A stretch of DNA of 64,000 bases from Podarcis erhardii (Eukaryota): assembly GCA_964252035.1 (NCBI GenBank), contig OZ176209.1. One strand, written 5' to 3'. The first letter of the stretch is position 1, and each line of letters begins with the position of its first letter. Below are positions 10,378-63,414 of this stretch, piece by piece. The notes beneath the pieces were generated by a model. It saw only the letters and a list, made by a program, of their open reading frames with translations. It ran no database searches and was not told the origin of the DNA. A program made the position numbers and the translations under genes.

Positions 10378-11079
10378 CTAGGAAGAAGAGAAAACATAGG
10401 AGGAGAAAGAGGTTAAGTCAGAGCAAGCAAGAATTTCAAATGTGAAGTAGGTCAGCTTAAACCTAACCAGTGGCAATGGTAAGAAAACATTATTAGTTGG
10501 TACAAAGGACTGTTATAACCGTGTTCCAGACAAAACAGTAGTTGAGCTTTCACAAGAAACATTTGCCCCTTGGAGAACTTTTCACACTTTCTACAACATT
10601 TGTCCAGAGATTTATTCACAATCTAGCTCTACCAGATAACATATGCTCCTCTACCTTTTTCCAAATCATGCTTTAGCCTTTAAAAGGGAAACACAAATAG
10701 CCTTATAAGAGAGCTTTATAAACAAGTGGAGTATGTTCCTTTTTAATGAAAAAGAGTCCAGTTAATGTATCAGTGCCTAAGGAGTTTCATTGCACAGAAC
10801 TGGCAAGCCATTAGATCACAGGGCAACCTACTAAAGTCTAAAGATGTATTGGGAAGACGCTGAACATGCAACGGATATTGGGATGGAGGGGGCTAATGCC
10901 TGGTTTCCCCCCCAAAAAAGATGCTTGAACCTCTAGAAAGTTTGGTGGATGGAAGCTGGAAGAGACCACCGCATAGAGTTGCTTTTTCTTTCTTCCTTTC
11001 GAAAAAAGGCATTGATTAATTTGTGCAAAATATGCACTTTGTAATTCTCAGTGGAGCTGAAGGAGCGAGAAATTGTTAC

Positions 11080-11292
11080 CTGTGATGATTGCGGGGTCCA
11101 TCCAGCTGCCAGGGCTGTCCCAATTCAGGCTGTCGGTGGTGGCAGTGTTGGATGTTGGTACACTGTGGTTGGCGTTGGAGGGGGAAGTAGCATTGGGCAG
11201 TCCACCAAAGTTGATGTTAATGTTCGGTAGAAGTGCCCTTAGCCCGTCCTGCCATTCCTTCATATTTAAACTCTCTACAGAACTGTTGTTGT
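11080..11292 (-). CDS. CNOT4: CNOT4 exon 11 (213 nt, symmetric phase 1)
   Basis: CCCAG|(D)NNSSVESLNMKEWQDGLRALLPNININFGG...DPAIIT|GTAACA. Confidence 0.95.
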
Positions 11293-14200
11293 CTGGGAGA
11301 TTTATCAACAAAAAAGAAAAAAGAAAATGAAAGATAGAAAATAAAAAGCTGAAGTTAGAAACAGATGCTGTTTTTAGTGAAAGATGGTGGTTCTCTAAGC
11401 ATTTAACACTGATTCCCTATCAAGAGAATGGGGCAGTGATGATAAATCAAGATGAAGCTTGAATGTTGGGCTGCCACAGTACGCACTATTACTTAAGCAT
11501 GTAATGGAGAAAAATCCTTCCCCATGAAAATCAGGGTTGAAACCACAATGGTTAAAACACACTGATTTTCATTACTAGCAAGAAAAAACACAACATCTTC
11601 AGATGAAAGCTCCCATTGCCCAATGACAAGATCTCTTTAGATTTACCAAAGAAGTTCTAACAGCTTCCTACTGAAGAAGATGCAAGACAATGCTACAGAA
11701 TCTGAACAGGGTTAGAGAATTGTGAAAACTTTATACATCACTTGTATTTTGTCAGAGGTAGGGAGAACCTGTTTTAGCACAGAGACTCTGAAGAAAAAGG
11801 AAATCCCTAAGTCTTTTCAGATGAATTCCAACCTGCTCTGAAGTTATGAACGACACACTAAAGAACCACACTCATATACATGACTACTAGCTTCAGTCTC
11901 TCTAAGGGAAGAGAAATGACCAGTACTAAATCGTTACTCTACTAATATTAGAAATATTAGGAATATTTGTATGGCATTCTTTGAACTCCAGTCAAACACA
12001 CAACTAAGACTTCAAGTCTTAGAGAATTCATAACCGGAAGATATGACTAGTTCACATTTACAAAGGACCAGGCAAAGTTTATGGAGAATAGGCCTATCAA
12101 CAGTTGCTAGTTGTGATAACTAAATGGCACTTTGATGTCCGGTGGCAGTACCCCTCTGAGTATTAGATCCTGGAAGCATTAGATTCAGAGGTAACTAGGC
12201 AGACACTGTTAACAAAAGAATGCTTGACTACATGAATCCTAGGACACAGCAGCTTATTCCCATTATAAAATTATGTTTTTAAAAACTGTTGATTACACAT
12301 CCAAATTCTATAAATGGTTTAATCAACAAAAAAGTTAAGCTGGACATGACACGTGTATTTAGAAAAACAGAATGTTGAAAAATTTTTGCAAGGAGAAATA
12401 TGATCATTTGATTTGTGAATTTCCATACAGAGACTAAGATGGTCATATATTGTTCAACTACCACTAATTCCCAATTTATTTGAGCTTTCTTGTTCTGCTG
12501 ATCTCTGTAGGTATGTTATTTCAGTTCTATGTTTAAACACCTACAAGTGACTGAGATGGGTTTCATCTGCTGGTGAAACACGAGAAAGTAACTTGTTGAT
12601 TCCCCTTTGGCCTGAAGGCTCCAGCACCACCTCCCATGCTGTTCCGGAGGGTTCTCCAACCACATGGAGCAGGTGTTTTTTTTGTTTTTTTGGAGGACAC
12701 AAGCAGCTGAAGGGGAAGCAGGCAACTGAAAAGTCATCTCCCCCTCTTCCACCAGAAGAAATGTCTTGTGAGTGGGACTCTGCTTAGGTTTTGTGGGTCT
12801 TGCAGGCATTAGCCAAGTCTGGATCCAAACCAGAATTTGAAAATAAAATAAATGCTGCAACTGTTTTTAAGTTGTCATATTTGTTTGGATACTTAAAGTG
12901 ACAAATCCTCATCTTTGGTAAGACAGATTTTTTTTTGGGGGGGGGAATACAAAGTAAGGATTAATTACTTGACAATACTTTCTAGAACTAGTGATCCAGA
13001 GTCACCTTTCTTCTCTTGTGAACAGCATTTGGACAGAGTATACAGCCGTTCTATAACTGTTTGAACATCCTCAAGAATCATGAGACAGATTTCAATCTAT
13101 ATCTGTAAAAAGGTCCACTATTATGAGCATTAACCCAAGCTATGTCTGACAAGAAGACTGTCTATATTCCTTTTTAGGGAGGGGGGTCTAACTATGTACC
13201 GATGAGCACATGCTCATGAAGGCCTTTCCAGATATACAGTTAAGAACTGATCTGAAATGGGAGTCAAGAGAGAAATGGGAAAAGAGCAAACAAGCAAGAG
13301 GAGCATTGTTTCTCACTCACCGCCCATTGAAGTTACAACTATTGCAGCCTTCAAATCACAAACCAAGGGTACATAACTGCCCTTCCTCAAGAAGCAAACT
13401 TTAAAAGCAAAACCTGAAAGGTGATGTGGGGTATTGTGAAAATTACCACAGTTTAGAGTCAAATCAAGTGCAAAATAAGTGAAAATGGTCTGCCATAGGC
13501 AGCGTATTACTGTGTGGACAGTAATTTATTTAAATGGGGACAATATTTAACAAAGAAGTTACCCTGGAGGCTGTTCAAGTCATGGGAAAGAAGAAGTGGA
13601 CTACCAAGCACTGAAAGGCAAACGGCACCCATCTCAGAGAGTGAAATAATTTGGGTTGCTCAATATTTGTTGTTAGTAAACCAATGAAAGCTATTTTAGC
13701 TTAGTATCAGTGTGTAAGAGTAAGCACAAAAATTGTGACCTCTCAGCTACCGCTGCAAAGGAACTGTTGCGTGAAACAGGTGGTCTACACTACTTATCAC
13801 TTCAGGGCTAAACCAAAGCAGTAAGGTTGTCCTCAACTACTGACAAATACTTCTCAAATACTGAAAAGTGCTCAAAAAAGCAGTCTCTAGGCTTTGAGAG
13901 ATGCACTGTGCACTCAACTAGGTATCTGGTGTAGATATAATACTCCCGGTTTGCTATCTACCATTAACCAAATAAGGAGTGGGCAGGCAGGTTCTGTCTC
14001 CCCTCTCCATCCTTTCCTTCTGGAGCATGAATTCCCTTTGTCCTTCCCCTGCTGACCTTAACCACATTAATTCAGCAGAAACATTAATTGCTACACAGGA
14101 ATATGGTTTCAGGCTCAGAATTTAGCTTACTGAGAACCTTGGCGTCTTTGTTTTTACCGCAAGGGTTGGAGCATATGTGATAAATGACTTGTGAAAGCTC

Positions 14201-26647: not shown

Positions 26648-28264
26648 CTCTAGAGTTCTCTTCTACTGAAGAGAAGGAAATGGATTTTTCAGGCTAGGCC
26701 AGAGTTCAGAGACTTCACACATTCAAACATCATTTCCACACTAACACACCTGATTGTTAAGTTCAGTGATAGCCCCTTTTATCTAATGGAATATGAATGG
26801 GAGAGCCCTTAGCAGACATCTTTTCTGGGTCACATGGAGAATCTGAAATGCTTCTCTGCATGTTTTTATATCCTGACATAATTACTAGCTTTTTCCATGT
26901 TCAAACTATATATCTAAGCCAGAGTCAAAGCTAAGACTAAAGTGCCAAAGAAATGCTTTTGTAACCAGAATGAAGAGACAGGTGTTGTGACCATGTTACA
27001 GATTTTATGATAAGCTGCAAATCCTCTGGATTCCCAAAATACTAACATAAGCAGTCACTATCAGTAAGAAATGGATGGTTTATAAATGTTTTAAGTGAAT
27101 CATAATGAGAACAGAAAAAAAAACAATAATTGTTACAGCAGCCAAGAAAAATAAAGCACAGGAAAACTAGTTTACAGAAATAAAAAGGTGCTATTACTGA
27201 ACAATATTATCTACACTGTTTAAGATATGGTCTGTAAACCCAAAACATCCCAAGGAGAAGACCACTGCAAGTTAAGATGGAAGGAACGGGTTACTTGAAG
27301 TTTGCTCTGAAATTCCAAAAGGTATTATCACGAAGCGATGCTTGCTATGCCATAAAGACTTATGTGTGTCAGCTACGAAGTGCACTCTTCCAGCGGGAAA
27401 CAATAATGCCAGCTGGAGTGAAATGTTACAAAAATGAAGGGCAAGGGATTAAAGTGAATAGTATTGGTGTCAGATGGCTTCATATACGGGATCAAAAAGA
27501 ATATTTTTTGCACAATTTTAAATTCACTGGCTCATCAATCTAAGATTTCAGATACAATTGAAGATACTAGAGTTCAAATGGCAATGGAGAGAAAAGATAT
27601 AGCTATTGCATTGGCAGCACACTGGTTGATAAATTCCCTCCCCAGTGAAGTTCATCTGGTGCCTACACTGTTGTTTTTCAGACATCTGGTTGGGGCATTT
27701 TTATACTCTCAGGCATTTTAAATTATTTTAAAAAAATATTTGAGTGAAAAGGAAACTGAATTTTACTGAGTTATCCATTCTGCTGACTTTGGAAAGTGCA
27801 AGTACCCTGGAATAGATATTGTATGAAAGCAGTATACAAATACTCAAAAAATAAATAAAAAATAGCTTTTTCCTGCCATATATGCCAAGCATCATGAACT
27901 GGGACTGAAGAATTCATTTTTTAAAAAGAGTTAAAATGTAATCTACTTATGCAATGAAGTATTCTATATATTTAAAATAAAGATCAACTCCACAGCATGA
28001 TCAAGACTGTCAATGTAAATCATAAAATCACTTTTGAAATAAGGATGATTGGACATATGATACTCCACTTTCCTTATAAAGCTCATTATAAGGCTAAATT
28101 CCAAGCTAAACATTTCATTTTCAAAATGCATAAAAACACATTTCCATCATGATAGTTACATTATCAATTCCAGTACCAAATACCATCAACCCCTTCTCGC
28201 TACTCTGATTTAGAGAAGCTGAAGGCATGAACAAGGCTCACTGATGCTTTCTCAGCGCACTTAC

Positions 28265-28762
28265 CTGCTATAGGGATCCCTCCTAGACCTGTGCTGTGTT
28301 GTGGTGGGAGGTTTAAGTCCAAGAAATTACTATTTGAAGGGGGATTTGCTGTGTGGTTCAAGTGCATGATGTTATTGCGTGGGAAGGCCATCCAAGGATA
28401 GCGAGCGGCTTGGCCTGGAAAACTGAAGGAGTTGTAAACTGCTCGATGCTGTTGAAATTGCGGGAACCTCTGTGGCAAGACTGAAAATGTGCTATTGAGA
28501 GAGTTGGCATTTGCGGGCACAGCAGGATGCAGAAATCCAGAGCCTGACCCTTTGGCGGTTGTAGTGTGTGGGGAAGGGTTCTGGAGAGACGTGGGCGAGA
28601 GGGAGGGTTGGTCTTGGACCGACAGTTCCTTCTCGATCAGGTCTGCTAAGGCTTTGCGGGTGATATCAAAGGGATCAAACCCCAAGTCATCTTCTTGCTG
28701 TTTGGAAGAACCAAATCCAAACGCCGCTTGCCAGTCTGTAGATGAGGATACTGGGATGGTTT
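28265..28762 (-). CDS. CNOT4: CNOT4 exon 10 (498 nt), includes the CAF40-binding motif
   Basis: CCCACAG|(E)TIPVSSSTDWQAAFGFGSSKQQEDDLGFDPFDITRKALADLIEKEL...GGIPIA|GTAAGT. Confidence 0.97.
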
Positions 28763-28875
28763 CTGTGGGATTTAAAACAGGTTATTAAAGACAAAGTTGC
28801 ATTTCCCCAGCTTAATATGAGTTAAAATACTGACCGATTTCCCTTTCCAATAATTGGTTATTCTCATTCCTATGG

Positions 28876-30275: not shown

Positions 30276-30333
30276 CTGCTGCGAGTTATCACAGTTTCCT
30301 ATACTGAGAGAATCTGAAGGTTTGTCGATAGTG
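30276..30333 (-). CDS. CNOT4: CNOT4 exon 8 (58 nt)
   Basis: CTCTCTAG|TIDKPSDSLSIGNCDNSQQ|GTAAGA. Confidence 0.95.
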
Positions 30334-32240: not shown

Positions 32241-34881
32241 TCTATTAAAATAGTCATACATAAAACAATAAATATATTTTCTTTTTCTGCACTAGTTAAA
32301 CATAAAAAATTCAAACACCCTAAAACATAAGACTGATAAGCAAAGACATTGGAATTTATTACAGTATTTGACAAAACAAAACCAATTTCCTCTCCTTTTT
32401 TCTCAAACTTGTTAGTTTTGCCCCAAGTGCATATTCCCACACTTGCTCTATCCAATCTCCTGCATATGGTATACTTCGAAGCCTCCAGTACTTGGTGTAA
32501 AGTGCTCTGGCTGCAGACACCATAATGCCGTATGCAACTGAATGACAACATAATCCTAACAGTTTAAAAGGTAACAAAGAAAAAAGAGGGAGCGTCAAGC
32601 AGGCAAGTAAATCATTTGCTGATTTTATCTCAGCCATTGAGTGTAAATGAGCAGAATCACTTCCTGCTTTTAAGATTGATACTTATGAGGTGTGACCCTG
32701 AATTTTGTGATCTATTCAAAGCTATACTGGTCATTCCCAAACTCTTCCTACAATAAAGTCTAATTCTAAGCACATGGACATATGTCTGTTTTCACGTGTC
32801 TGTGGATGATATTGGACTGGATAACCAAGACTATATACAGTCTCATCTGAATCAATTACAGAAGCAGGAAGTCAACACAAGAAAGTATTCTAAAAAGAAT
32901 TTGTTTGTTAAGTCATACAAACTCAAAAATCAAACAAGCACTATACTCCAGCTATAGCCTACATTTTAGAGGTTTTGGCAGAACACTACTCTTTCAATAT
33001 CTGTTGAATTATCTTAAGTCCACAGGCAAAGAGGGAAACATAAATGTATATATTACATTGTTTCAGCCTACTTAACACTATATATATTTTTAAGCAAAGC
33101 ATGGAGTAAAACTAGGTGAAACGGACTGTTTTTTCTTTGTGTAAAACTATTTAACACTCATAATGAACTGAAACTTTTAAATTAATTATTCAAACACAAA
33201 ATTTAATTATTTCCTCATTATTAGAAATATTGCAGTCTTTCAGTCCTGCGGCCAGAAACACAGCTGTTTCATAGAAGTTTCCAGATGTTCAAAACCCCTT
33301 TACTAATAAATAGGCTTGAGTTCCTGTTAAGTCTGTGATAGCATGCCTCTGAAAATATTGATATCTGGATTAGACCTATGATCCACTTAGAGGAAGCGCT
33401 GAATATGGTTTGAAAAGTCCCAAATCAGGAGATTTTAGGCATAAGACTAGCCACAGGCGAAGGCTGGAACCAAAAGATTCTTAAGGTAAGAGTAAAAAGC
33501 TCTTCCACTCACAGAGGAAAGGTTGCCAATTTTTTATTTCAACTGTAGTCCTTTTGTACCATGTTAAATCTTGCTCTGAAATGTTTTCTAACCTTCAGGA
33601 GTTGTTGTGGGATGGTGGTGGAGGAAGATGAGATAGTGGGGAAAGATGAGAAAGTCCTATTCATTGTGTGGACTTTTGGATCCTGGTCAGCTGAACCAGT
33701 ACTACAGATGTGTAGAACATTTTCAGATCATTTTTTCAGGCTCATAACTAAAAAAGAGCCTAAGAGCTGCTTAGCTTCATATAAAGCATTACTACAACAT
33801 TTCCATAGTGCTATGGTAATCCACAATGGAATATCTAAAGCAGATCACTTTCTTCTCAGCAGGACAGCTTCAAAATTAGGTAATGGGATGTTTTTCTAAA
33901 TAGAAAAGCTCTTCTATTGACATTCTACTTCCAAAAGTGCTGATGTCTGCAATGATTTCTAGTGATGAAGTCTGAAATATTAGGTCAATGTTAGAACAAG
34001 AATACAAGGTATTCAGTGAGTTTACCCTATTTCCTAATAAGCTTCTTAGGCCCAGCTCACACATTACTGGTGCAACATGGAAGTAACCTCTTGTGTTCTG
34101 GTGCCTCATTAACACTAGAACACTAGAACAAGAAACAATGGAGTCAGGCAACTTATATGGCCACTTTCCCGCACCTCAACCTATTACAGGTGGGAAACTA
34201 GAGCCTAAGAAAGCAGTTTCCACACTGCAACAGTACACATCAGTATTCCCAATTCAAAAGCATAATATGTTGTGCTATGCAACTTGCATTTTTAATCCAA
34301 CTTGTTAAAAGCCCCACAATGATGCTTATGATGCAAGGGACATATTGCAGTATTAAACACAAATTCAAGTAGTCTTAGTAGTCTAAAGGGAGGGGAAAGC
34401 TGATGGATCTCAATCCAGTGCCATACTTGCTTAACAAAATGCCTGGGTGAAGAGTGTAATGTACTTCGATCTGCCAACTGAGATCAGAGTATTCAAGACA
34501 ATTAATTAAATGACTCTTACCTAAAAGATGAGAGTTCCTACTATGCAACTTTTTCTCTTAAAGAACATTAAAAATTGTTTGCTGAAGTGAGGTACGTGGT
34601 TTGCTAGGACACAGACGCAGAAGGAAACTTGTTTCAAAATGCCTTGCCTTTTCCACAACCCTTACCTTTAAAAATCATCTTCTGGCCTAGACACAGACTT
34701 CTCCTGAACAAACTGCCCATTGCAAAATAATGTGCAGCCCCCCCACCTAGGCATCACCTAGTGGTTCAGGCCAACCATTTTAACTTGAATCCAGCTCTCT
34801 TGACAGAGGCTAGAGAATCATCCCTCCACATCAGTGAGAGAGAAAGAAAGCTAACTAAAGTATAAAAGGCAGCACAATTAC

Positions 34882-35037
34882 CCGAAATCTGAATCTGGAC
34901 CATCTGGAGTCATGTGTTCTGAGTCTGTGCCATTTTCTAAAATAGGAGGCGTTTTCCTGTGTTCCATAGTTAAGCCGTTGACTGATTTACTTGAACTCTG
35001 TAATGATGGCCAGGCATCTTTGTTATTACTGTTGGGT
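34882..35037 (-). CDS. CNOT4: CNOT4 additional cassette exon (156 nt, symmetric phase 2) between exons 7 and 8
   Basis: Acceptor CTCTCTTTTACTTTCACCTCTTTCCAG, donor GG|GTAATT; in frame with both neighbours: (R)PNSNNKDAWPSLQSSSKSVNGLTMEHRKTPPILENGTDSEHMTPDGPDSDF(G). Confidence 0.85.
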
Positions 35038-37937
35038 CTGGAAAGAGGTGAAAGTAAAAGAGAGTTCAAGTTATGTAGAAAATCTTAATAGTGAAACACT
35101 GGGAAAATTATTCCTCATGCCATATACTGTGCAGAGGAATATGGAGGTCTTCAACAGAAAAGTTAATGTCTGCTATTAAGACTGTAGAAAGAAACTGTTT
35201 TCTTGCACCAGGCAGGCTGTTTACACTTATAGTTGTTGTTTTTTTAATTAGGTGAATCCCACCAAGACATGTGGTCCTTAAACTGTTCTTTCATCCCAAC
35301 ATTCTCCAGTTTTATGAGTAATGTTACCCCTACCCTTCATATGCTATATCCAAGCTTTGTCCTTGAGGATTTCCCCCATGTGACCGGCATTATACACTTC
35401 TGAAATATCACTGTACCGGTGCTGGTAAGTTCTAAGTTACCCAATTTGTCTCGTTTCAAATACTGATTCCCAAAGTTTCAAAACTCAGGCTAATATAAGC
35501 ATAGATCATTAAATAAGGTTCTTTTGGTGTGTAAAATTATTTGAGAGGATGAATAAAGGTAAACTGAAGCAGGGAATCACATCTTTAAACAGACATTCCC
35601 TGCTGGGTTTTGTATGTATATGCAAATAAATATTAATATTTATCATCAACATAATTATAAATGTTTCTTTCTCCTAATTAGTCCTTCAGTTTCACCCTAT
35701 TTTTAAAATCACCATCCCAGGAAAGAATGAAGGATATTTAGAACTGTAACTTATAATGATTATGTTTAGAGACCTGTGCTCTTTTCAAAATGTGTATCTT
35801 GTCTTGCCATTCATTCCTTGAAATGCAATAAATTTATGAGTTCTCAAAATGAATGTGGAACAGACACACCCTGCTTTTTAAAACCAAGCGTCACTGATCT
35901 AACAAAAATTGATTGCATTTTCAATTTTTATATTGATTCCTCATCTTTCCATGCATTTCAGAATTGGTTCCATAAAGCAGACACTACAAGAAGGTAAATA
36001 TGGCACTGTCAGTTCCATTTATCAAGTTGAAAATTAGTCTGCCATGTAATTCTTATCTGCTTGCCTACCGTGTTCTAAAGTTTACACCCACATAAAAGTT
36101 GCTTGTCTACATCTCTTCCAGATCTGAATGCTGGTAACTGATGAGTGAACTCACAAACTGGCTATTTCTGTCAGCATTTCAAGTTACTGCCCACAAGAAC
36201 TGTATGAAATCAGAAAGCAGTGGGAATCACAGCCTTTTCTCTGGACCAATGGAAGTTAAGTTTGAGCAGAAAAAATAGTAATAAAGAAATCATGAAAGAA
36301 AATCTTCATGAAGTATACAGCAGATGCATTTTCTGTTTTGAATGCAGAACCAACTTATTTGCTACTTAGATGACACTTGTTTCAGGAACAAAGCTGAACT
36401 CTATGCTTAAGAACTTAGATTCACAGCAAAGAGTGGCAAAAAACATCAAAACAGATGACAAGAGGATAGCAAGGACCTAACATTTATTCAGTTTCTTCAG
36501 CTTACTGGGATCTTATAAAATAAATCACTGGAGATGTAAGACTGCTGAGACAGCACAGACAATTCAGAATGAACCAGTAGGAAGTAAGCTTATTTCTACT
36601 TTGTTTTATGGTCCAGATAGAATGGTCATGCATACCCAATCTACCTTGGGCTATTTTGTAAGAATGGTAATTAAGTTCTTGAAAAATTCCTGCTGCAGAG
36701 ACTGGACAGAGCCAAATTTGTAGCCATTTCTAAAGACATTGTCTTCTTGCTGTTTCTTCTTGCCTTATGATGTGACTCCATCAGGTCTCAGAACACACTG
36801 TGAGAAAACATGACTTGACTCTTGCATGTTTGGTTTATTTCTTTTGATGCTCTTGAAGAAACAGTATTTCTCTCGCAAAGCTCACACTAATACAACAGCC
36901 AAGAGAGTAAGAAGGTATCATTATCCATATGAGAGGCTGGCACATGACAAAACTGATCTGATGTTCTGCCCAGAGTCAAAGTATCAACTTTCCTTAATAC
37001 AAGATTTGTCTTTTCCTTTAAGAGGCAATGCTGATCCGCTAAGATTTGACACTGGAAAAATTGTTTAAGATCCTGAGCAAGGTTGCTCTTGAAATCTTAT
37101 TGGAAAAGGATCCCCATTAAGAAGGATCTAAAGAGTGCAAATTCTTGTTCACCAATCATTTGCCATGGTCACAAAGTTCAGGTGTTCAGTCACAAATAGA
37201 TTTTCCCATTCATTTAGGTTTCCCTTATTAATAGTTCAAGAGGCTAAACCAGAGGTATTAGTAGTCTGACTACCATTCAAACTCAAGAAGTATCTTGCAA
37301 GCACAAACCTTATGTCATATTCTAAATATTAATGGTGTTTCTCTTATTAAGTAATGTAAGCTTTTCCAGAAATAGACAACCACTTAAAATTGTTACTTGG
37401 AATAGATAGGTGCTAAGTCAAAAAACCCTCAGCAACCTTTCATTAAACAGACATATAAATCTATGTTACTCTGTCAAAGTCTGCACCCTACATATTAGCA
37501 GCCAACGTATTGAAACAAAAATCTCAACTAAGTTGCAATGAGTCAGAACATTTTACACTAACTTTGTCTTTCAGATGAGTCCTTTGTGGCATTCTCACCT
37601 TCTAAAGGCAAGGTGGACTCACACATTCATAGTAATGTTGTGTTGTACTTAAAATGAGTAAATCTTGTATTTTGTATTTCCAGTTTAATGACATGCCCTG
37701 CTATTTCACACCAAACCACACTATTTTACAATTGTAAATGATGCACTAATGCGAACATCTGCTGAAACAGTTGTTTGAAAATGCTGCATACATCTGTATA
37801 ATGATGCAAAGGAAGTAAGATGTCAAGTGTGCTGGCTTAAGCAGTAAGGCAGTGAAGCAGAGCGCTTAGAAAGAGGGGTAAAGGGGGAGGTTTGATGAAA
37901 ACTAAAGAGTACACACAGAGAACCTTTACCCTCATAC

Positions 37938-38062
37938 CTCTGTAGTGAAGTCACTTTGTTCTTGTTCTTGTCAACTGCATTTGAAGACAGCTGGAGGAAG
38001 TTGGGGTTTAACTTGTATAATTCCTGGAGTAACTTCTGTTCATATTCTTGATGCTTACCAGC
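37938..38062 (-). CDS. CNOT4: CNOT4 exon 7 (125 nt)
   Basis: TATCCCAG|AGKHQEYEQKLLQELYKLNPNFLQLSSNAVDKNKNKVTSLQ AG|GTATGA. Confidence 0.96.
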
Positions 38063-39391: not shown

Positions 39392-40492
39392 CCGTATTTT
39401 TCGCTCTATAACACGCACCTGACCATAACACGCACATTGTTTTTAGAGGAGGAAAACAAGGGAAAAAACATTCTGAATGAAACAGTGGATGTATCATTTT
39501 TGGGCTTCATGCTGTGGCCACAGACATGTGATCTGATGGTGAATTTGGGGTGACCCAATGCCAAAATCCTGAGAATTCCTGTGGATCCATGCTTTGTAAC
39601 CACGTTTTTGCACCATTGCAGCCCCAGGCAACAGTGGGTGCGTGATTTTTTTGGTGCAGGCTGTAGCCATGGACATGCTATGTGATCTGATGGTGAATTT
39701 GGGGTGACCCAATGCAAGGATCCTGAGAATCCCTGTGGATCCATGCTTTTTAACCACGTTTTTGCACCATTGCAGCCCCAGGCAACAGTGGGTGCGTGAT
39801 TTTGGTGGGGCAGGCTGTAGCCATGGACATGCTATGTGATCTGATGGTGAATTTGGGGTGACCCAATGCAAGGATCCTGAGGATCTATGTGGATCTATGC
39901 TTTGTAACCACATTTTAAGTGGGGAGCGAAGGAAAAACAAAGAAGGGACATTAGAGGGGTGTGCAGAGAAGCAGCTGGCTAAGAATGCAGGAGAGGGATT
40001 TAACCGGTTGGAGGAAAGAAAGNNNNNNNNNNNNNNNNNNNNNNNNNNNNNNNNNNNNNNNNNNNNNNNNNNNNNNNNNNNNNNNNNNNNNNNNNNNNNN
40101 NNNNNNNNNNNNNNNNNNNNNNNNNNNNNNNNNNNNNNNNNNNNNNNNNNNNNNNNNNNNNNNNNNNNNNNNNNNNNNNNNNNNNNNNNNNNNNNNNNNN
40201 NNNNNNNNNGCACCGGAGCTTGCCTGGAGGGGAGGGGCTTTCCCTGCTCTTTGTTCCGTTTCAGCAAACACAGCAACAAAACAGAGGAGGGTGGGCAGTA
40301 AGACCCTGAGGCAGAATGCAGGAAAGCAGCCGCTTCCTCTTTTCAGGTTTCGCTTTTCCTTGAAGCGTCGCGATTTGATTTTTGCCTGGTTTTTCGGCTC
40401 CAGGGACCACACATTCGCTCTATAACACGCACAGACATTTCCCCTTCCTTTTTAGGAGAAAAAATCTGCGTGTTATAGAGGGAAAAATACGG
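39392..40492. mobile_element. Tc1/mariner (Tc2-like) non-autonomous element with internal 154-bp tandem repeat
   Basis: TA|CCGTATTTTTCGCTCTATAACACGCA ... TGCGTGTTATAGAGGGAAAAATACGG|TA (26-bp TIR, 1 mismatch); repeat units start at 39527, 39681, 39835. Confidence 0.85.
40023..40209. other. Assembly gap (187 N)
   Basis: Direct reading. Confidence 1.
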
Positions 40493-60986: not shown

Positions 60987-61863
60987 TATGAAGTTACTTG
61001 AACAAACGATTTCCTAAAACTACATGTTTTATGGGGACTGTATGAATTTGTTGAACCACAAGGAACAAGTACACCAGACATATTTAATAATTTGTTCAGT
61101 CGTTATAATTTCAAGAAATAAAGTCACGTCAATAATCATTTGCTCTTATTATTACTATCACCATGCTAACATGCCTATGGCCACAAAGGCAGTAGCTAAT
61201 ATGATCTGGATTTTTTTTTTAAAAAAAAGGTAAACACAGACAGTATTACAGCATGCACATCACCACCACTTCAATCTAAACCAATTTATTAGAAGTCACA
61301 AGCAGAACTCTTAAGCCCTTAAGTAGTGAAAGGTAGTGAAGCCAATTACATGCCAATTTCTAGAGCCCAGCTCCTGACTGCATTACTTCCTAGGCTTACA
61401 TTACATACAATGTATGTCCTACACTAGCATAGATTTTCCTCCTGAGAAACATGTTTACCTTTAGTACACAGGGTATAGAAATCTGTCAGGAATTACTACC
61501 CTAATAAAAAAGTATGTGTGGAGTGGCAGGAGGAGGCGGGGAGAGATACATGAAGGAACCATAACCTCACTTTGAAGGAAGAAAGGAAATGCAGACCATG
61601 GAAGAGAAAGCGGTGAAAGGCCTTCAACCTTACTTAATCGGAGCATCCCACAAAACATAAGGCATGAGGAACTGACTTCTGTATAACGGGAAAGCCGTAC
61701 GGGAACGTAAGAGGAAATTTTAAAAATCTAGGGAAATTCGAAATGCCCATCACAATAGGGCAAGAGGGGACACTTAACTGCCACCCACTACCAAACACAC
61801 GTGCTGCTGCTGGAGAGGCTGGATACTCCCCTCCCCACCAACCACCACCTCTTTCAATACTGT

Positions 61864-61903
61864 GGAAGGAAGGAAGGAAGGAAGGAAGGAAGGAAGGAAG
61901 GAA
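61864..61903. repeat. (GGAA)10 microsatellite
   Basis: Direct reading. Confidence 0.95.
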
Positions 61904-62428
61904 GGAGAGAGAAACCTCCTCCTGCTCAGCACCTTATCAGACCCAAAGCCTATGAGCGATAGGTTCCTCCTGAACATGCACACGCGAGAAGCGGCGGCGG
62001 AGGGGTGGGGATGGGGATGCGAAGGAGGCGCTGCCCGAGAGCCCTCCGCCTCTCTTGACTCCCCAGCCCCCGCCCTGAGCAGCCACAGCGTGGCCTCCGC
62101 CTCGCTCCGAGCCCCCTCTCCATCCAGCTGGTCCCCGGCGCGAGCGGCCAGGCGCCGGCAACCCCTCGGACCACCCTTGCGCTCCTGAGGGAGGCGAGCC
62201 GGCCCTCGCCGCCCCCGCCGCCGCCGCCGGGGCAGGGGCAGGAGCCGCCCTGGCTGGCCCCAGCCCGCCTTCCCGCCCCTCCGGCCACAGGGAGCCCCGG
62301 CGCCGGCCCAGGGTCTGGAGCAGGCGCATGAGGGATGGCCGAGGCCTGCAGGCTCCCCGCGAAGCCTCCGCTCTCTCGTAGCTAGGCAGCCCCGGCTAGC
62401 GCTCCCCGAGCCCCGGCTGCTCACTCAC

Positions 62429-62690
62429 CCGCCGCCTCGTCGTCCCTGCTCCACGGCGACCGGCTGTCTGGCGGCGGGGGCGGCGATACCCTCTCGCGCT
62501 CCCTTCCTCCCGCTCGCTCGCTCGCTCGCTCGGCTTCTATAGCAGCGGGGAAGGGGTCCGGGCGGCTCCTCCGACGACCTTTATGTGAGAGACGGGTAAT
62601 CTCCAGGCTCTGCGCGCTCCGCTGCCAGACCGGCCACCATCTTACATTAGGGAGAGACTGCTTGCCTGCCCCGGACGCTGCTTCCAAGGC
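62429..62690 (-). other. CNOT4: CNOT4 non-coding exon 1 (TSS approximate)
   Basis: Donor GCGG|GTGAGT at 62428 inside the CpG island; exon 2 begins with 5'UTR and needs an upstream exon. Confidence 0.75.
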
Positions 62691-62698
62691 GCATGCGC
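62689..62698. promoter_or_regulatory. NRF1 motif
   Basis: Perfect palindrome GCGCATGCGC at the promoter. Confidence 0.75.
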
Positions 62699-62779
62699 AC
62701 GAGCCGCCGGAGAGGCGGGTGCGGGGGAAAGGAAAAAGGTAGAAGGCGACGCGACGAGAGAGAGAGAGAGAGGGAGAGA

Positions 62780-62798
62780 GCATGACGGGAGTTGTAGT
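62780..62798 (-). promoter_or_regulatory. ZNF143/THAP11 (SBS) motif
   Basis: Reverse complement ACTACAACTCCCGTCATGC fits the ACTACAnnTCCCA..ATGC consensus, just upstream of exon 1. Confidence 0.75.
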
Positions 62799-63414
62799 CT
62801 TTACTGGCGGGGGAGGGAAATAGGGCAGCCGGCGAGCGTGTCCTTCCCCGGGTTCAAAAGGGGATGGGTTAGGCTGCTGACGAGGCGGTCACACTGTCGC
62901 CCAGGAAACAGTGATAGCGGTGGCATTTAAACCGGTTTATTCCACATCAGTCAGAGGGACTGAGCTGGTTTAACGTCAGCTAGTGGTTCGATTGAAATGC
63001 TCCCGGTTCGCTTATCCACCCCAGCCCGCTTCTTCCGGCACACATTCCTAGAGAGCGGGAGCCTGCATTTAAGAATCCCTCCCCTTTTCAAAAGGATGCA
63101 ACAGATTCCGATCATTTTAAGCACGGCCAGAGAGAGGGTCATGGAGGGATGGGGTAGGCAGTGCCATGAAGATTCATGATTCGTCGACTCTGATCGGCAA
63201 AAGCTTGTAACACAACAAAACCTGGCCCGGTGGCAAACAATATTCTTCGTTGTTCTGCTGTAACACTAACTCAGTTAACCCTCTGGGGATTTCCTAGCGG
63301 TAGTAATTCTTGTATGACACACAGATTCACCACTGAGACTTCTTCTCATATGCAACAATTACTAATTACTTAAAAATACGCACAGTATATTCAAGAGACG
63401 GGCTGTCACCCAGG

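What the first reader, a model, noticed from the sequence alone, without database searches (positions are those of the whole stretch)
34882..35037. Extra 52-codon CNOT4 cassette exon carrying a DAWPSL motif
Seen: an isolated symmetric exon with good splice sites, in frame with exons 7 and 8, adding PNSNNKDAWPSLQSSSKSVNGLTMEHRKTPPILENGTDSEHMTPDGPDSDFG (710 to 762 aa). It is absent from the main human isoforms as I recall them (exon 7 joins exon 8 directly). DAWPSL resembles the (D/E)(F/W)PxL short motifs that recur in disordered regions of ribosome/mRNP proteins such as SERBP1, and there are TP phospho-acceptor sites. Inference: a regulated interaction module retained in non-mammals and reduced in mammals.
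Basis: partly seen in the sequence, partly recalled or inferred. Interest (0 to 1): 0.7.

Follow-up and report, generated by a model that had tools for sequence, protein, structure and literature searches.

The report
Known, deeply conserved CNOT4 cassette exon
This is a real 156-base optional coding exon of a lizard's CNOT4 gene, kept almost unchanged from sharks to birds and already present in public gene models of many non-mammalian vertebrates, but its function has never been tested.

Summary
On the minus strand, 35037..34882 is a 156-nt exon with a pyrimidine tract, an AG acceptor and a GTAAT donor, in phase with CNOT4 exons 7 and 8. Splice sites plus an open frame are not beyond chance here (1,490 such candidates on this strand); homology is what proves the exon. 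All 135 CNOT4-type sequences fetched carry the peptide, mostly at residues ~272-325 of full-length proteins: sharks, bichir, sturgeon, teleosts, coelacanth, frogs, caecilians, squamates, turtles, crocodilians and birds. It is often in "isoform X1/X2" (762/765 aa). Models that skip it exist in Lacerta agilis, coelacanth and two caecilians, so it is modelled as a true cassette. It is as conserved as the neighbouring constitutive exons, with an invariant W-P-x-L core. Same-species assemblies of transcriptome size hold the exon's words without its introns, which points to inclusion in mRNA. The exon inserts at the hinge between the ribosome-binding N-terminal region and the CCR4-NOT-binding tail. 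Its role as an interaction or regulatory module is inference. No mammal appeared in the truncated lists, so loss in mammals remains untested. No paper mentions the exon. The scan had not found it before on other DNA.

The parts
34882..35037 (-). CNOT4 cassette exon, 156 nt. It encodes 51 full codons plus two split junction codons.
   Evidence: Direct reading. HMMER hits down to E 3e-20. 98% identical to the exon of Rhineura isoform X1. Same-species assemblies of transcriptome size hold its words without the flanking intron.
35038..35062 (-). Acceptor AG (35039-35038) preceded by a pyrimidine-rich tract
   Evidence: CTCTTTTACTTTCACCTCTTTCCAG|A
34874..34881 (-). Donor GT (34881-34880) in the context GG|GTAATTGT. 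In frame the intron reads G-stop, so the exon cannot extend at its 3' end.
37938..38062 (-). Upstream constitutive exon 7 (AGKHQEYEQ...VTSLQ + AG), 125 nt, donor CAG AG|gtatga
   Evidence: tblastn to squamate CNOT4
30276..30333 (-). Downstream exon 8, 58 nt. Its first base completes the junction codon.
37928..37937 (-). Site of the alternative '+9' donor that adds R-Y-D in other species. In this window the second GT lies 8 nt, not 9 nt, after the first, so using it would shift the frame.
   Evidence: One search compared with the LQRYD[V/A/T]|PNS forms
28263..28766 (-). Large exon of the C-terminal region. It holds the CAF40/CNOT9-binding motif (LGFDP plus helix), about 135 residues downstream of the cassette.
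   Evidence: motif definition from PMC6362812
46075..46254 (-). Start-codon exon encoding the RING domain (identifies the gene)
   Evidence: Pfam zf-RING_4, E 7e-21; tblastn

Best explanation
This is the lizard ortholog of an ancient, alternatively included coding exon of CNOT4, the E3 ubiquitin ligase that associates facultatively with the CCR4-NOT deadenylase. When included, it inserts 52 residues right after the folded N-terminal region (RING, basic linker, RRM, zinc finger; human residues 1-274) and before the disordered C-terminal region that binds CCR4-NOT through the CAF40-binding motif. The insert looks like a disordered linker: 51% Ser/Thr/Pro/Gly/Asn, pI 4.7, with an acidic second half. 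It carries short conserved motifs: K-[D/E]-x-W-P-x-L, N-G-L, R-K-[T/S]-P-P and T-P-D-G followed by an acidic run. Shown here: the exon is real, in frame, under purifying selection across jawed vertebrates, modelled both with and without in several lineages, and apparently present in mRNA of this species. Inferred (about 0.3): inclusion adds a docking or phospho-regulated motif at the hinge. That could change how the basic N-terminal region holds back the C-terminal region from CCR4-NOT, or it could recruit an additional partner.
For: Exon anatomy and phase. Gene identity: RING Pfam hit and the full exon map against squamate CNOT4. Homology: 13 hits in 1.84 billion representatives, including Denticeps CNOT4 and a frog protein joined to exon 8 exactly as modelled here. 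All 120 best-scoring full-length CNOT4 proteins, spanning sharks to birds, carry the exon at the same junction. Paired models with and without it exist in Lacerta agilis, Latimeria, Geotrypetes and Microcaecilia. Conservation equals or exceeds that of the adjacent constitutive disordered exon, for example shark 75-76% vs 68% and bird 94-96% vs 91-92%. Eleven columns are invariant, including W-P-x-L. RNA: runs X9-X12 and X14, carrying the same species label as the whole-genome runs, hold 0.40 of the sampled words. That equals the exon-only fraction (126/326 = 0.39), in assemblies of 85-145 M letters. Hinge position: human NTR 1-274 and CTR 275-575 (PMC7615087). NOT4-N prevents NOT4-C from binding CCR4-NOT, possibly by charge (PMC6362812). 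Charge profile.
Against: The 0.40-share runs are only guessed to be RNA. Skipping is annotated in relatives but was not shown in this species, so the exon could be constitutive here. The gene models in relatives are automatic predictions. The AlphaFold model is low-confidence throughout (mean pLDDT 34.9), so 'disordered' rests on composition and the absence of predicted secondary structure. Nothing tests any binding partner. No Pfam, PDB or literature match for the peptide.
Confidence: 0.85

Rival explanations
1. The exon is constitutive in this species, always included rather than regulated. The skipped models in relatives would then be minor or artefactual predictions.
For: Several assemblies of this species and of two related labels hold the exon's words. 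In many birds and reptiles the exon-bearing form is 'isoform X1'. No skipped transcript was seen in this species.
Against: Skipped models exist in a close lizard (Lacerta agilis X4, with the same junction as predicted here), in coelacanth and in two caecilians. Contigs show presence, not absence, so they say nothing about skipping. The symmetric phase is typical of a cassette.
Confidence: 0.15
2. One reading: DAWPSL is a SERBP1-type (D/E)(F/W)PxL motif that links CNOT4 to ribosomes or mRNPs.
For: The [D/E]-x-W-P-x-L core is invariant across 46 sequences from sharks to birds. From my own memory, SERBP1 ends in E-A-F-P-A-L-A, which resembles D-A-W-P-S-L. CNOT4 does act on ribosomes (PMC7615087).
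Against: No curated motif class or binding partner for such a motif is known to me or was found (0 papers). In the human crosslinking study, only the folded N-terminal region contacted the ribosome. The resemblance covers six residues.
Confidence: 0.08
3. The conserved Trp is a GW182-like W-motif that docks into the tryptophan pockets on the convex face of CNOT9/CAF40, while the CAF40-binding motif occupies the concave face. Inclusion would then strengthen CNOT4's facultative binding to CCR4-NOT.
For: The Trp is invariant, in a polar, Ser/Asn/Asp-rich, probably disordered context. The two CNOT9 surfaces can be bound at the same time (PMC6362812). The C-terminal region holds several other invariant Trp residues.
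Against: It is a single Trp followed by Pro, not the Gly/Ser/Thr-flanked repeats of GW182. There are no binding data, and multimer modelling is not available here.
Confidence: 0.1
4. It is a chance open frame or a decaying pseudo-exon with no coding role.
For: AG...GT open candidates are common: 1,490 on this strand of the window.
Against: E-values reach 3e-20 in an exhaustive search. The peptide sits at the same junction in every listed class of non-mammalian jawed vertebrate, with 75% shark-to-lizard identity. Its words occur without intron in small assemblies.
Confidence: 0.01

Closest known systems
CNOT4 'isoform X1/X2' models (762/765 aa) of reptiles and birds, e.g. Rhineura floridana XP_061495440.1, Crotalus tigris XP_039210039.1, Haliaeetus XP_010560240.1; also Latimeria XP_014344503.1
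   Same: Same exon at the same junction. The window's peptide matches the squamate exon at 50 of 51 residues. The same flanking exons are present.
   Different: The window has Ser where the tetrapod, coelacanth and shark sequences compared have Pro (D-S-E-H vs D-P-E-H). The +9 alternative donor that gives the 765-aa forms is out of frame in this assembly.
Human CNOT4 as studied biochemically (575 aa; NTR 1-274, CTR 275-575; Keskeny 2019 PMC6362812; Absmeier 2023 PMC7615087)
   Same: RING, basic linker, RRM, zinc finger and the LGFDP-helix CAF40-binding motif are all encoded in the window.
   Different: In those constructs the NTR runs straight into the CTR. The cassette would insert 52 residues at that boundary. 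Neither paper mentions isoforms.
Ray-finned fish and frog versions of the same exon
   Same: Same core peptide and position.
   Different: Ray-finned fishes continue into about 16-20 further residues (...A-L-S-P-F-S-S...). In genomic fragments this continuation is contiguous with the exon. Frogs have an extra ~22-residue insert after it. The lizard introns hold no relic of either.
GW182/TNRC6 W-motifs; PAM2 motifs of CCR4-NOT or PABP partners; LIR (W-x-x-L) motifs
   Same: Short aromatic motifs in disordered regions of mRNA-decay factors. W-P-S-L fits the bare [W/F/Y]-x-x-[L/I/V] pattern, and N-x-N-x-K-[D/E]-x-W-P loosely recalls L-N-P-N-A-K-E-F-x-P.
   Different: The key PAM2 hydrophobic positions (Leu, Ala, Phe) are not matched, and Pfam finds no PAM2. 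A Pro after the Trp is unfavourable for a LIR (my own knowledge). It is a single Trp rather than a repeat.

Membership tests
CNOT4 / NOT4 gene (ortholog) | N-terminal C4C4 RING domain | tested here: met
   Pfam zf-RING_4, E 7.1e-21, on window:46078-46248:-
CNOT4 / NOT4 gene (ortholog) | RRM and C3H zinc-finger exons in order, and a C-terminal LGFDP-helix CAF40-binding motif | tested here: met
   tblastn of squamate CNOT4 maps eleven collinear coding blocks at 88-98% identity (71% for one over-extended block). The LGFDP...ADLIEKE motif is read in the 28.7-kb exon. Motif definition from PMC6362812.
Alternative cassette exon | Length divisible by 3, canonical AG/GT, same phase on both sides | tested here: met
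   156 nt; junction phases read directly
Alternative cassette exon | Inclusion in mature mRNA of this species | tested here: inconclusive
   Same-species small assemblies hold 0.40 of the words, which is the exon-only fraction. The runs are only guessed to be RNA, and junction reads were unobtainable.
Alternative cassette exon | Skipping in mature mRNA of this species | not testable with these tools
   Skipped models exist only in relatives: Lacerta agilis X4, Latimeria X3/X4 and caecilian X2.
PAM2 (PABP MLLE-binding) motif | L-N-x-x-A-x-x-F-x-P hydrophobic pattern; Pfam PAM2 | tested here: not met
   No Pfam family at E <= 0.1. Leu, Ala and Phe positions are not matched on direct reading of the alignment.
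   The pattern [D/E]-x-W-P-x-L is invariant, but no curated definition or partner was found.
GW182-like W-motif | Trp in a disordered polar context that binds the CNOT9 or CNOT1 Trp pockets | not testable with these tools
   The context fits. Binding cannot be tested here.

The most novel reading that the evidence does not exclude
A roughly 450-million-year-old short-motif cassette at the hinge between the ribosome-binding and CCR4-NOT-binding halves of CNOT4 tunes the enzyme's facultative association with CCR4-NOT. It would do so through its invariant Trp docking on CNOT9, or through its acidic tail competing for the basic N-terminal region. It would have gone unnoticed because mammals, the source of all biochemical constructs, have lost it or rarely include it.
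Probability: 0.12. Interest if true: 0.55.

Novelty: already known. Interest (0 to 1): 0.27.

Why it matters
CNOT4's on-and-off association with CCR4-NOT is an open question. Published work suggests that the N-terminal region restrains the C-terminal region, without a known switch (PMC6362812). A deeply conserved optional insert at exactly that boundary is a candidate switch or docking site, and it is missing from the constructs used in the two human CNOT4 studies read here. As a discovery, though, the exon is not new: public gene models already contain it. Its value is as a pointer to an untested isoform, not as a new element.

Tried and rejected
- **Plus-strand reading:** all three frames give no CNOT4 peptide; the gene is on the minus strand.
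- **Exon-only word search with the fish protein:** only 19 candidates, all clupeiform. Too few shared words, so I widened the region.
- **Pfam on the exon:** nothing. **PDB:** nothing.
- **Papers:** four searches plus seven papers read or scanned. None mentions the exon or CNOT4 isoforms at this junction.
- **AlphaFold2 of Rhineura X1 with a 46-sequence alignment:** mean pLDDT 34.9, with even the folded domains below 50. Uninformative, apart from predicting no secondary structure in the cassette while recovering the CAF40-binding helix.
- **The look-up of encoding contigs:** I could not place the divergent fragment P0001 or fetch orthologous DNA for intron or dN/dS analysis.
- **Relics of the frog insert or fish extension in the lizard introns:** none.
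- **Joined (spliced) protein model:** All searches used single exons by reference or natural proteins returned by the tools.
- **Third word search:** not used. Ranking by similarity to a non-mammalian query would put any mammalian hit below the 120 rows shown.
- **Rejected readings:** PAM2 and LIR, on direct comparison of key positions.

Full report
**1. What is at the coordinates.**

The plus strand gives nothing recognisable. On the minus strand, 35037..34882 reads as an exon. A pyrimidine-rich tract ends in cag, followed by 156 nt and then GG|gtaattgt.

The window carries CNOT4 on the minus strand:
- The start-codon exon at ~46.2 kb hits Pfam zf-RING_4 at E 7e-21.
- A local tblastn of a full-length squamate CNOT4 maps eleven collinear coding blocks from 46254 down to 10079.

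The exon upstream of the cassette is 38062..37938 and ends CAG AG|gtatga. The exon downstream starts at 30333 with a single base that completes a codon. All three junctions share the same phase, so inclusion and skipping are both in frame.

**2. Is it more than chance?**

The minus strand of this window holds 20,020 AG...GT pairs spaced 60-300 nt in multiples of three, and 1,490 of them are open in the required phase. The exon's G+C (0.42) does not differ from its flanks (0.41).

Homology is decisive. An exhaustive HMMER scan of 1.84 billion representative proteins gave 13 hits, six of them at E <= 1e-10. They include:
- a 775-aa CNOT4 of the fish Denticeps, with the peptide at residues 273-322;
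- a partial frog protein (Engystomops) in which the peptide is joined to exon 8 exactly as modelled here.

**3. Distribution.**

I used the Denticeps protein as query and scored its zinc-finger-to-cassette region. The word search returned 1,031 CNOT4 proteins, of which the best 120 were listed. A local phmmer shows that all 135 CNOT4-type sequences fetched by then carry the exon, mostly at ~272-325 in full-length proteins. The one other protein fetched (P0012) is unrelated.

The sequences come from sharks, bichir, sturgeon, many teleosts, coelacanth, frogs, caecilians, squamates, turtles, crocodilians and birds. The junction is always ...LQR|PNS...DF|G.[I/V]DK. Squamate exons match the window at 50 of 51 residues, and the squamate-specific S-I-G-N-C-D-N downstream confirms that the window is a lizard or snake. 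Earlier notes of this scan call this genome a lizard.

The 762/765-aa exon-bearing form is 'isoform X1/X2' in many birds and reptiles, and one 90% cluster has 485 members.

Models that lack exactly this exon also exist:
- Lacerta agilis X4 (710 aa), with the same skipped junction I predict for this window;
- Latimeria X3/X4 (715/712 aa), against X1/X2 (767/764 aa);
- Geotrypetes X2 (708 aa) against X1 (760 aa);
- Microcaecilia X2 (709 aa) against X1 (761 aa).

These are automatic models, but they are built with transcript support.

**4. Conservation.**

Identity to the Rhineura X1 reference, cassette versus the next 100 residues of constitutive disordered sequence:

| Lineage | Cassette | Next 100 residues |
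|---|---|---|
| Birds | 94-96% | 91-92% |
| Turtle | 98% | 90% |
| Caecilians | 88-90% | 80% |
| Coelacanth | 84% | 83% |
| Sharks | 75-76% | 68% |
| Teleosts | 51-69% | 59-71% |

In a 46-sequence alignment the invariant cassette columns are S277, K280, W283, P284, L286, N294, L296, K302, P304, L307 and T317 (Rhineura numbering). Near-invariant columns are Q287, K291, G295, E299, H300, R301, P305, D312, H315, P318 and D322.

The conserved pieces are therefore K-[D/E]-x-W-P-x-L, N-G-L, (R)-K-[T/S]-P-P and T-P, followed by an acidic run. This is the signature of purifying selection on short linear motifs.

**5. RNA evidence.**

The look-up of sequencing runs on the exon plus 100 nt each side used 35 sampled words:
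- Four runs of ~1.26 G letters hold all the words, as whole-genome DNA would.
- Ten runs of 65-145 M letters (X5-X14) hold 0.40. The fraction expected if only the exon is present is 126/326 = 0.39.
- Five of those ten (X9-X12, X14; two studies) carry the same species label as the whole-genome runs. Sequence divergence of the introns therefore cannot explain the missing intron words; a spliced transcript can.

The runs are only guessed to be RNA, so I rate inclusion as likely rather than shown.

**6. What it probably does.**

The peptide has no Pfam family, no PDB relative even at E 10 and no mention in the paper library. It is 51% Ser/Thr/Pro/Gly/Asn and 18% hydrophobic, with pI 4.7. Its second half has six acidic and two basic residues.

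An AlphaFold2 model of Rhineura X1 is low-confidence throughout (mean pLDDT 34.9), so it proves little. It predicts no secondary structure anywhere in 248-460, yet it recovers the known CAF40-binding helix at 461-474.

Position is the most informative fact:
- Studies of human CNOT4 define the ribosome-binding N-terminal region as 1-274 and the disordered CCR4-NOT-binding C-terminal region as 275-575 (PMC7615087).
- They report that the basic linker and RRM of the N-terminal part prevent the C-terminal part from binding CCR4-NOT. The authors speculate that the acidic CAF40-binding motif is sequestered by charge (PMC6362812).
- The cassette inserts at exactly this hinge.

My best reading is that it is an optional, disordered, phospho-regulatable motif module. 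It would either alter this intramolecular restraint or add a partner contact. This step is inference; I give it about 0.3.

Specific variants I considered:
- **GW182-like Trp docking on the convex face of CNOT9:** compatible with simultaneous binding of the CAF40-binding motif.
rests on memory only.
- **PAM2:** key positions not matched, and no Pfam hit.
- **LIR:** W-P-S-L fits the bare pattern, but the Pro is unfavourable.

**7. Mammals.**

No mammal appears among the 120 listed proteins or the 15 listed members of the 485-member cluster. Both lists are truncated, and ranking favours sequences close to the query, so this is weak evidence. From memory, the main human isoforms (572-713 aa) lack the peptide. 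I could not test that here.

**8. Verdict.**

The exon is already in public annotation for many species, including other lizards, so it is not new. What is missing is any functional study. The scan's own notes held nothing on this gene apart from this same finding.

Noticed in passing
window 37928-37938 (minus strand): Many reptiles, birds, a frog and coelacanth have forms three residues longer (LQ-RYD-[V/A/T]) that use a donor 9 nt downstream of the exon 7 donor. In this window the second GT is 8 nt downstream (CAGAG gtatgagg gtaaag), so using it would shift the frame and hit a stop inside the cassette. This is either a lineage-specific loss of that donor or a one-base assembly error.
   Followed up: partly
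window ~11078-11305 (minus strand): A second optional CNOT4 exon (~75 residues...KEWQDGLRALLPNININFGG...). The 691-aa squamate isoform maps from the 28.3-kb exon straight to the last exon, while the 765-aa isoform includes this exon.
   Followed up: partly
proteins P0026, P0028, P0072, P0007 and genomic fragments P0002, P0004, P0008: In ray-finned fishes the cassette continues into about 16-20 further residues (...A-L-S-P-F-S-S-x-C-D-P...). In genomic ORF fragments this continuation is contiguous with the exon, so the fish exon uses a donor further downstream. Sharks, coelacanth and amniotes lack it.
   Followed up: partly
proteins P0127, P0079, P0074, P0081 (frogs): Frog CNOT4 models carry an extra ~22-residue insert (L-F-W-[E/D]-...-H-N-V-[A/S]-K-F-G-R-V-I-E-D-D-...) between the cassette and exon 8. 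It is absent from caecilians and all other classes. The lizard introns hold no relic of it.
   Followed up: partly
protein P0001 (Logan fragment, 72 aa, one contig): This is the most divergent tetrapod-like copy of the exon (82% identity), with changes at otherwise invariant positions. It has Thr (ACN) where nearly all other genomic fragments have Arg or Ser (AGN) from the acceptor AG, so the canonical acceptor seems lost. It may be a decaying relic in an unidentified lineage.
   Followed up: partly
window 40023-40209: A run of 187 N in the intron between the zinc-finger exon and exon 7.
   Followed up: no
window ~61700-62900 (minus strand): A G+C-rich stretch giving long Gly/Arg/Ala/Pro-rich open frames, about 15 kb upstream of the start-codon exon. 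It is probably the CpG-island promoter and 5' UTR exon of CNOT4.
   Followed up: no
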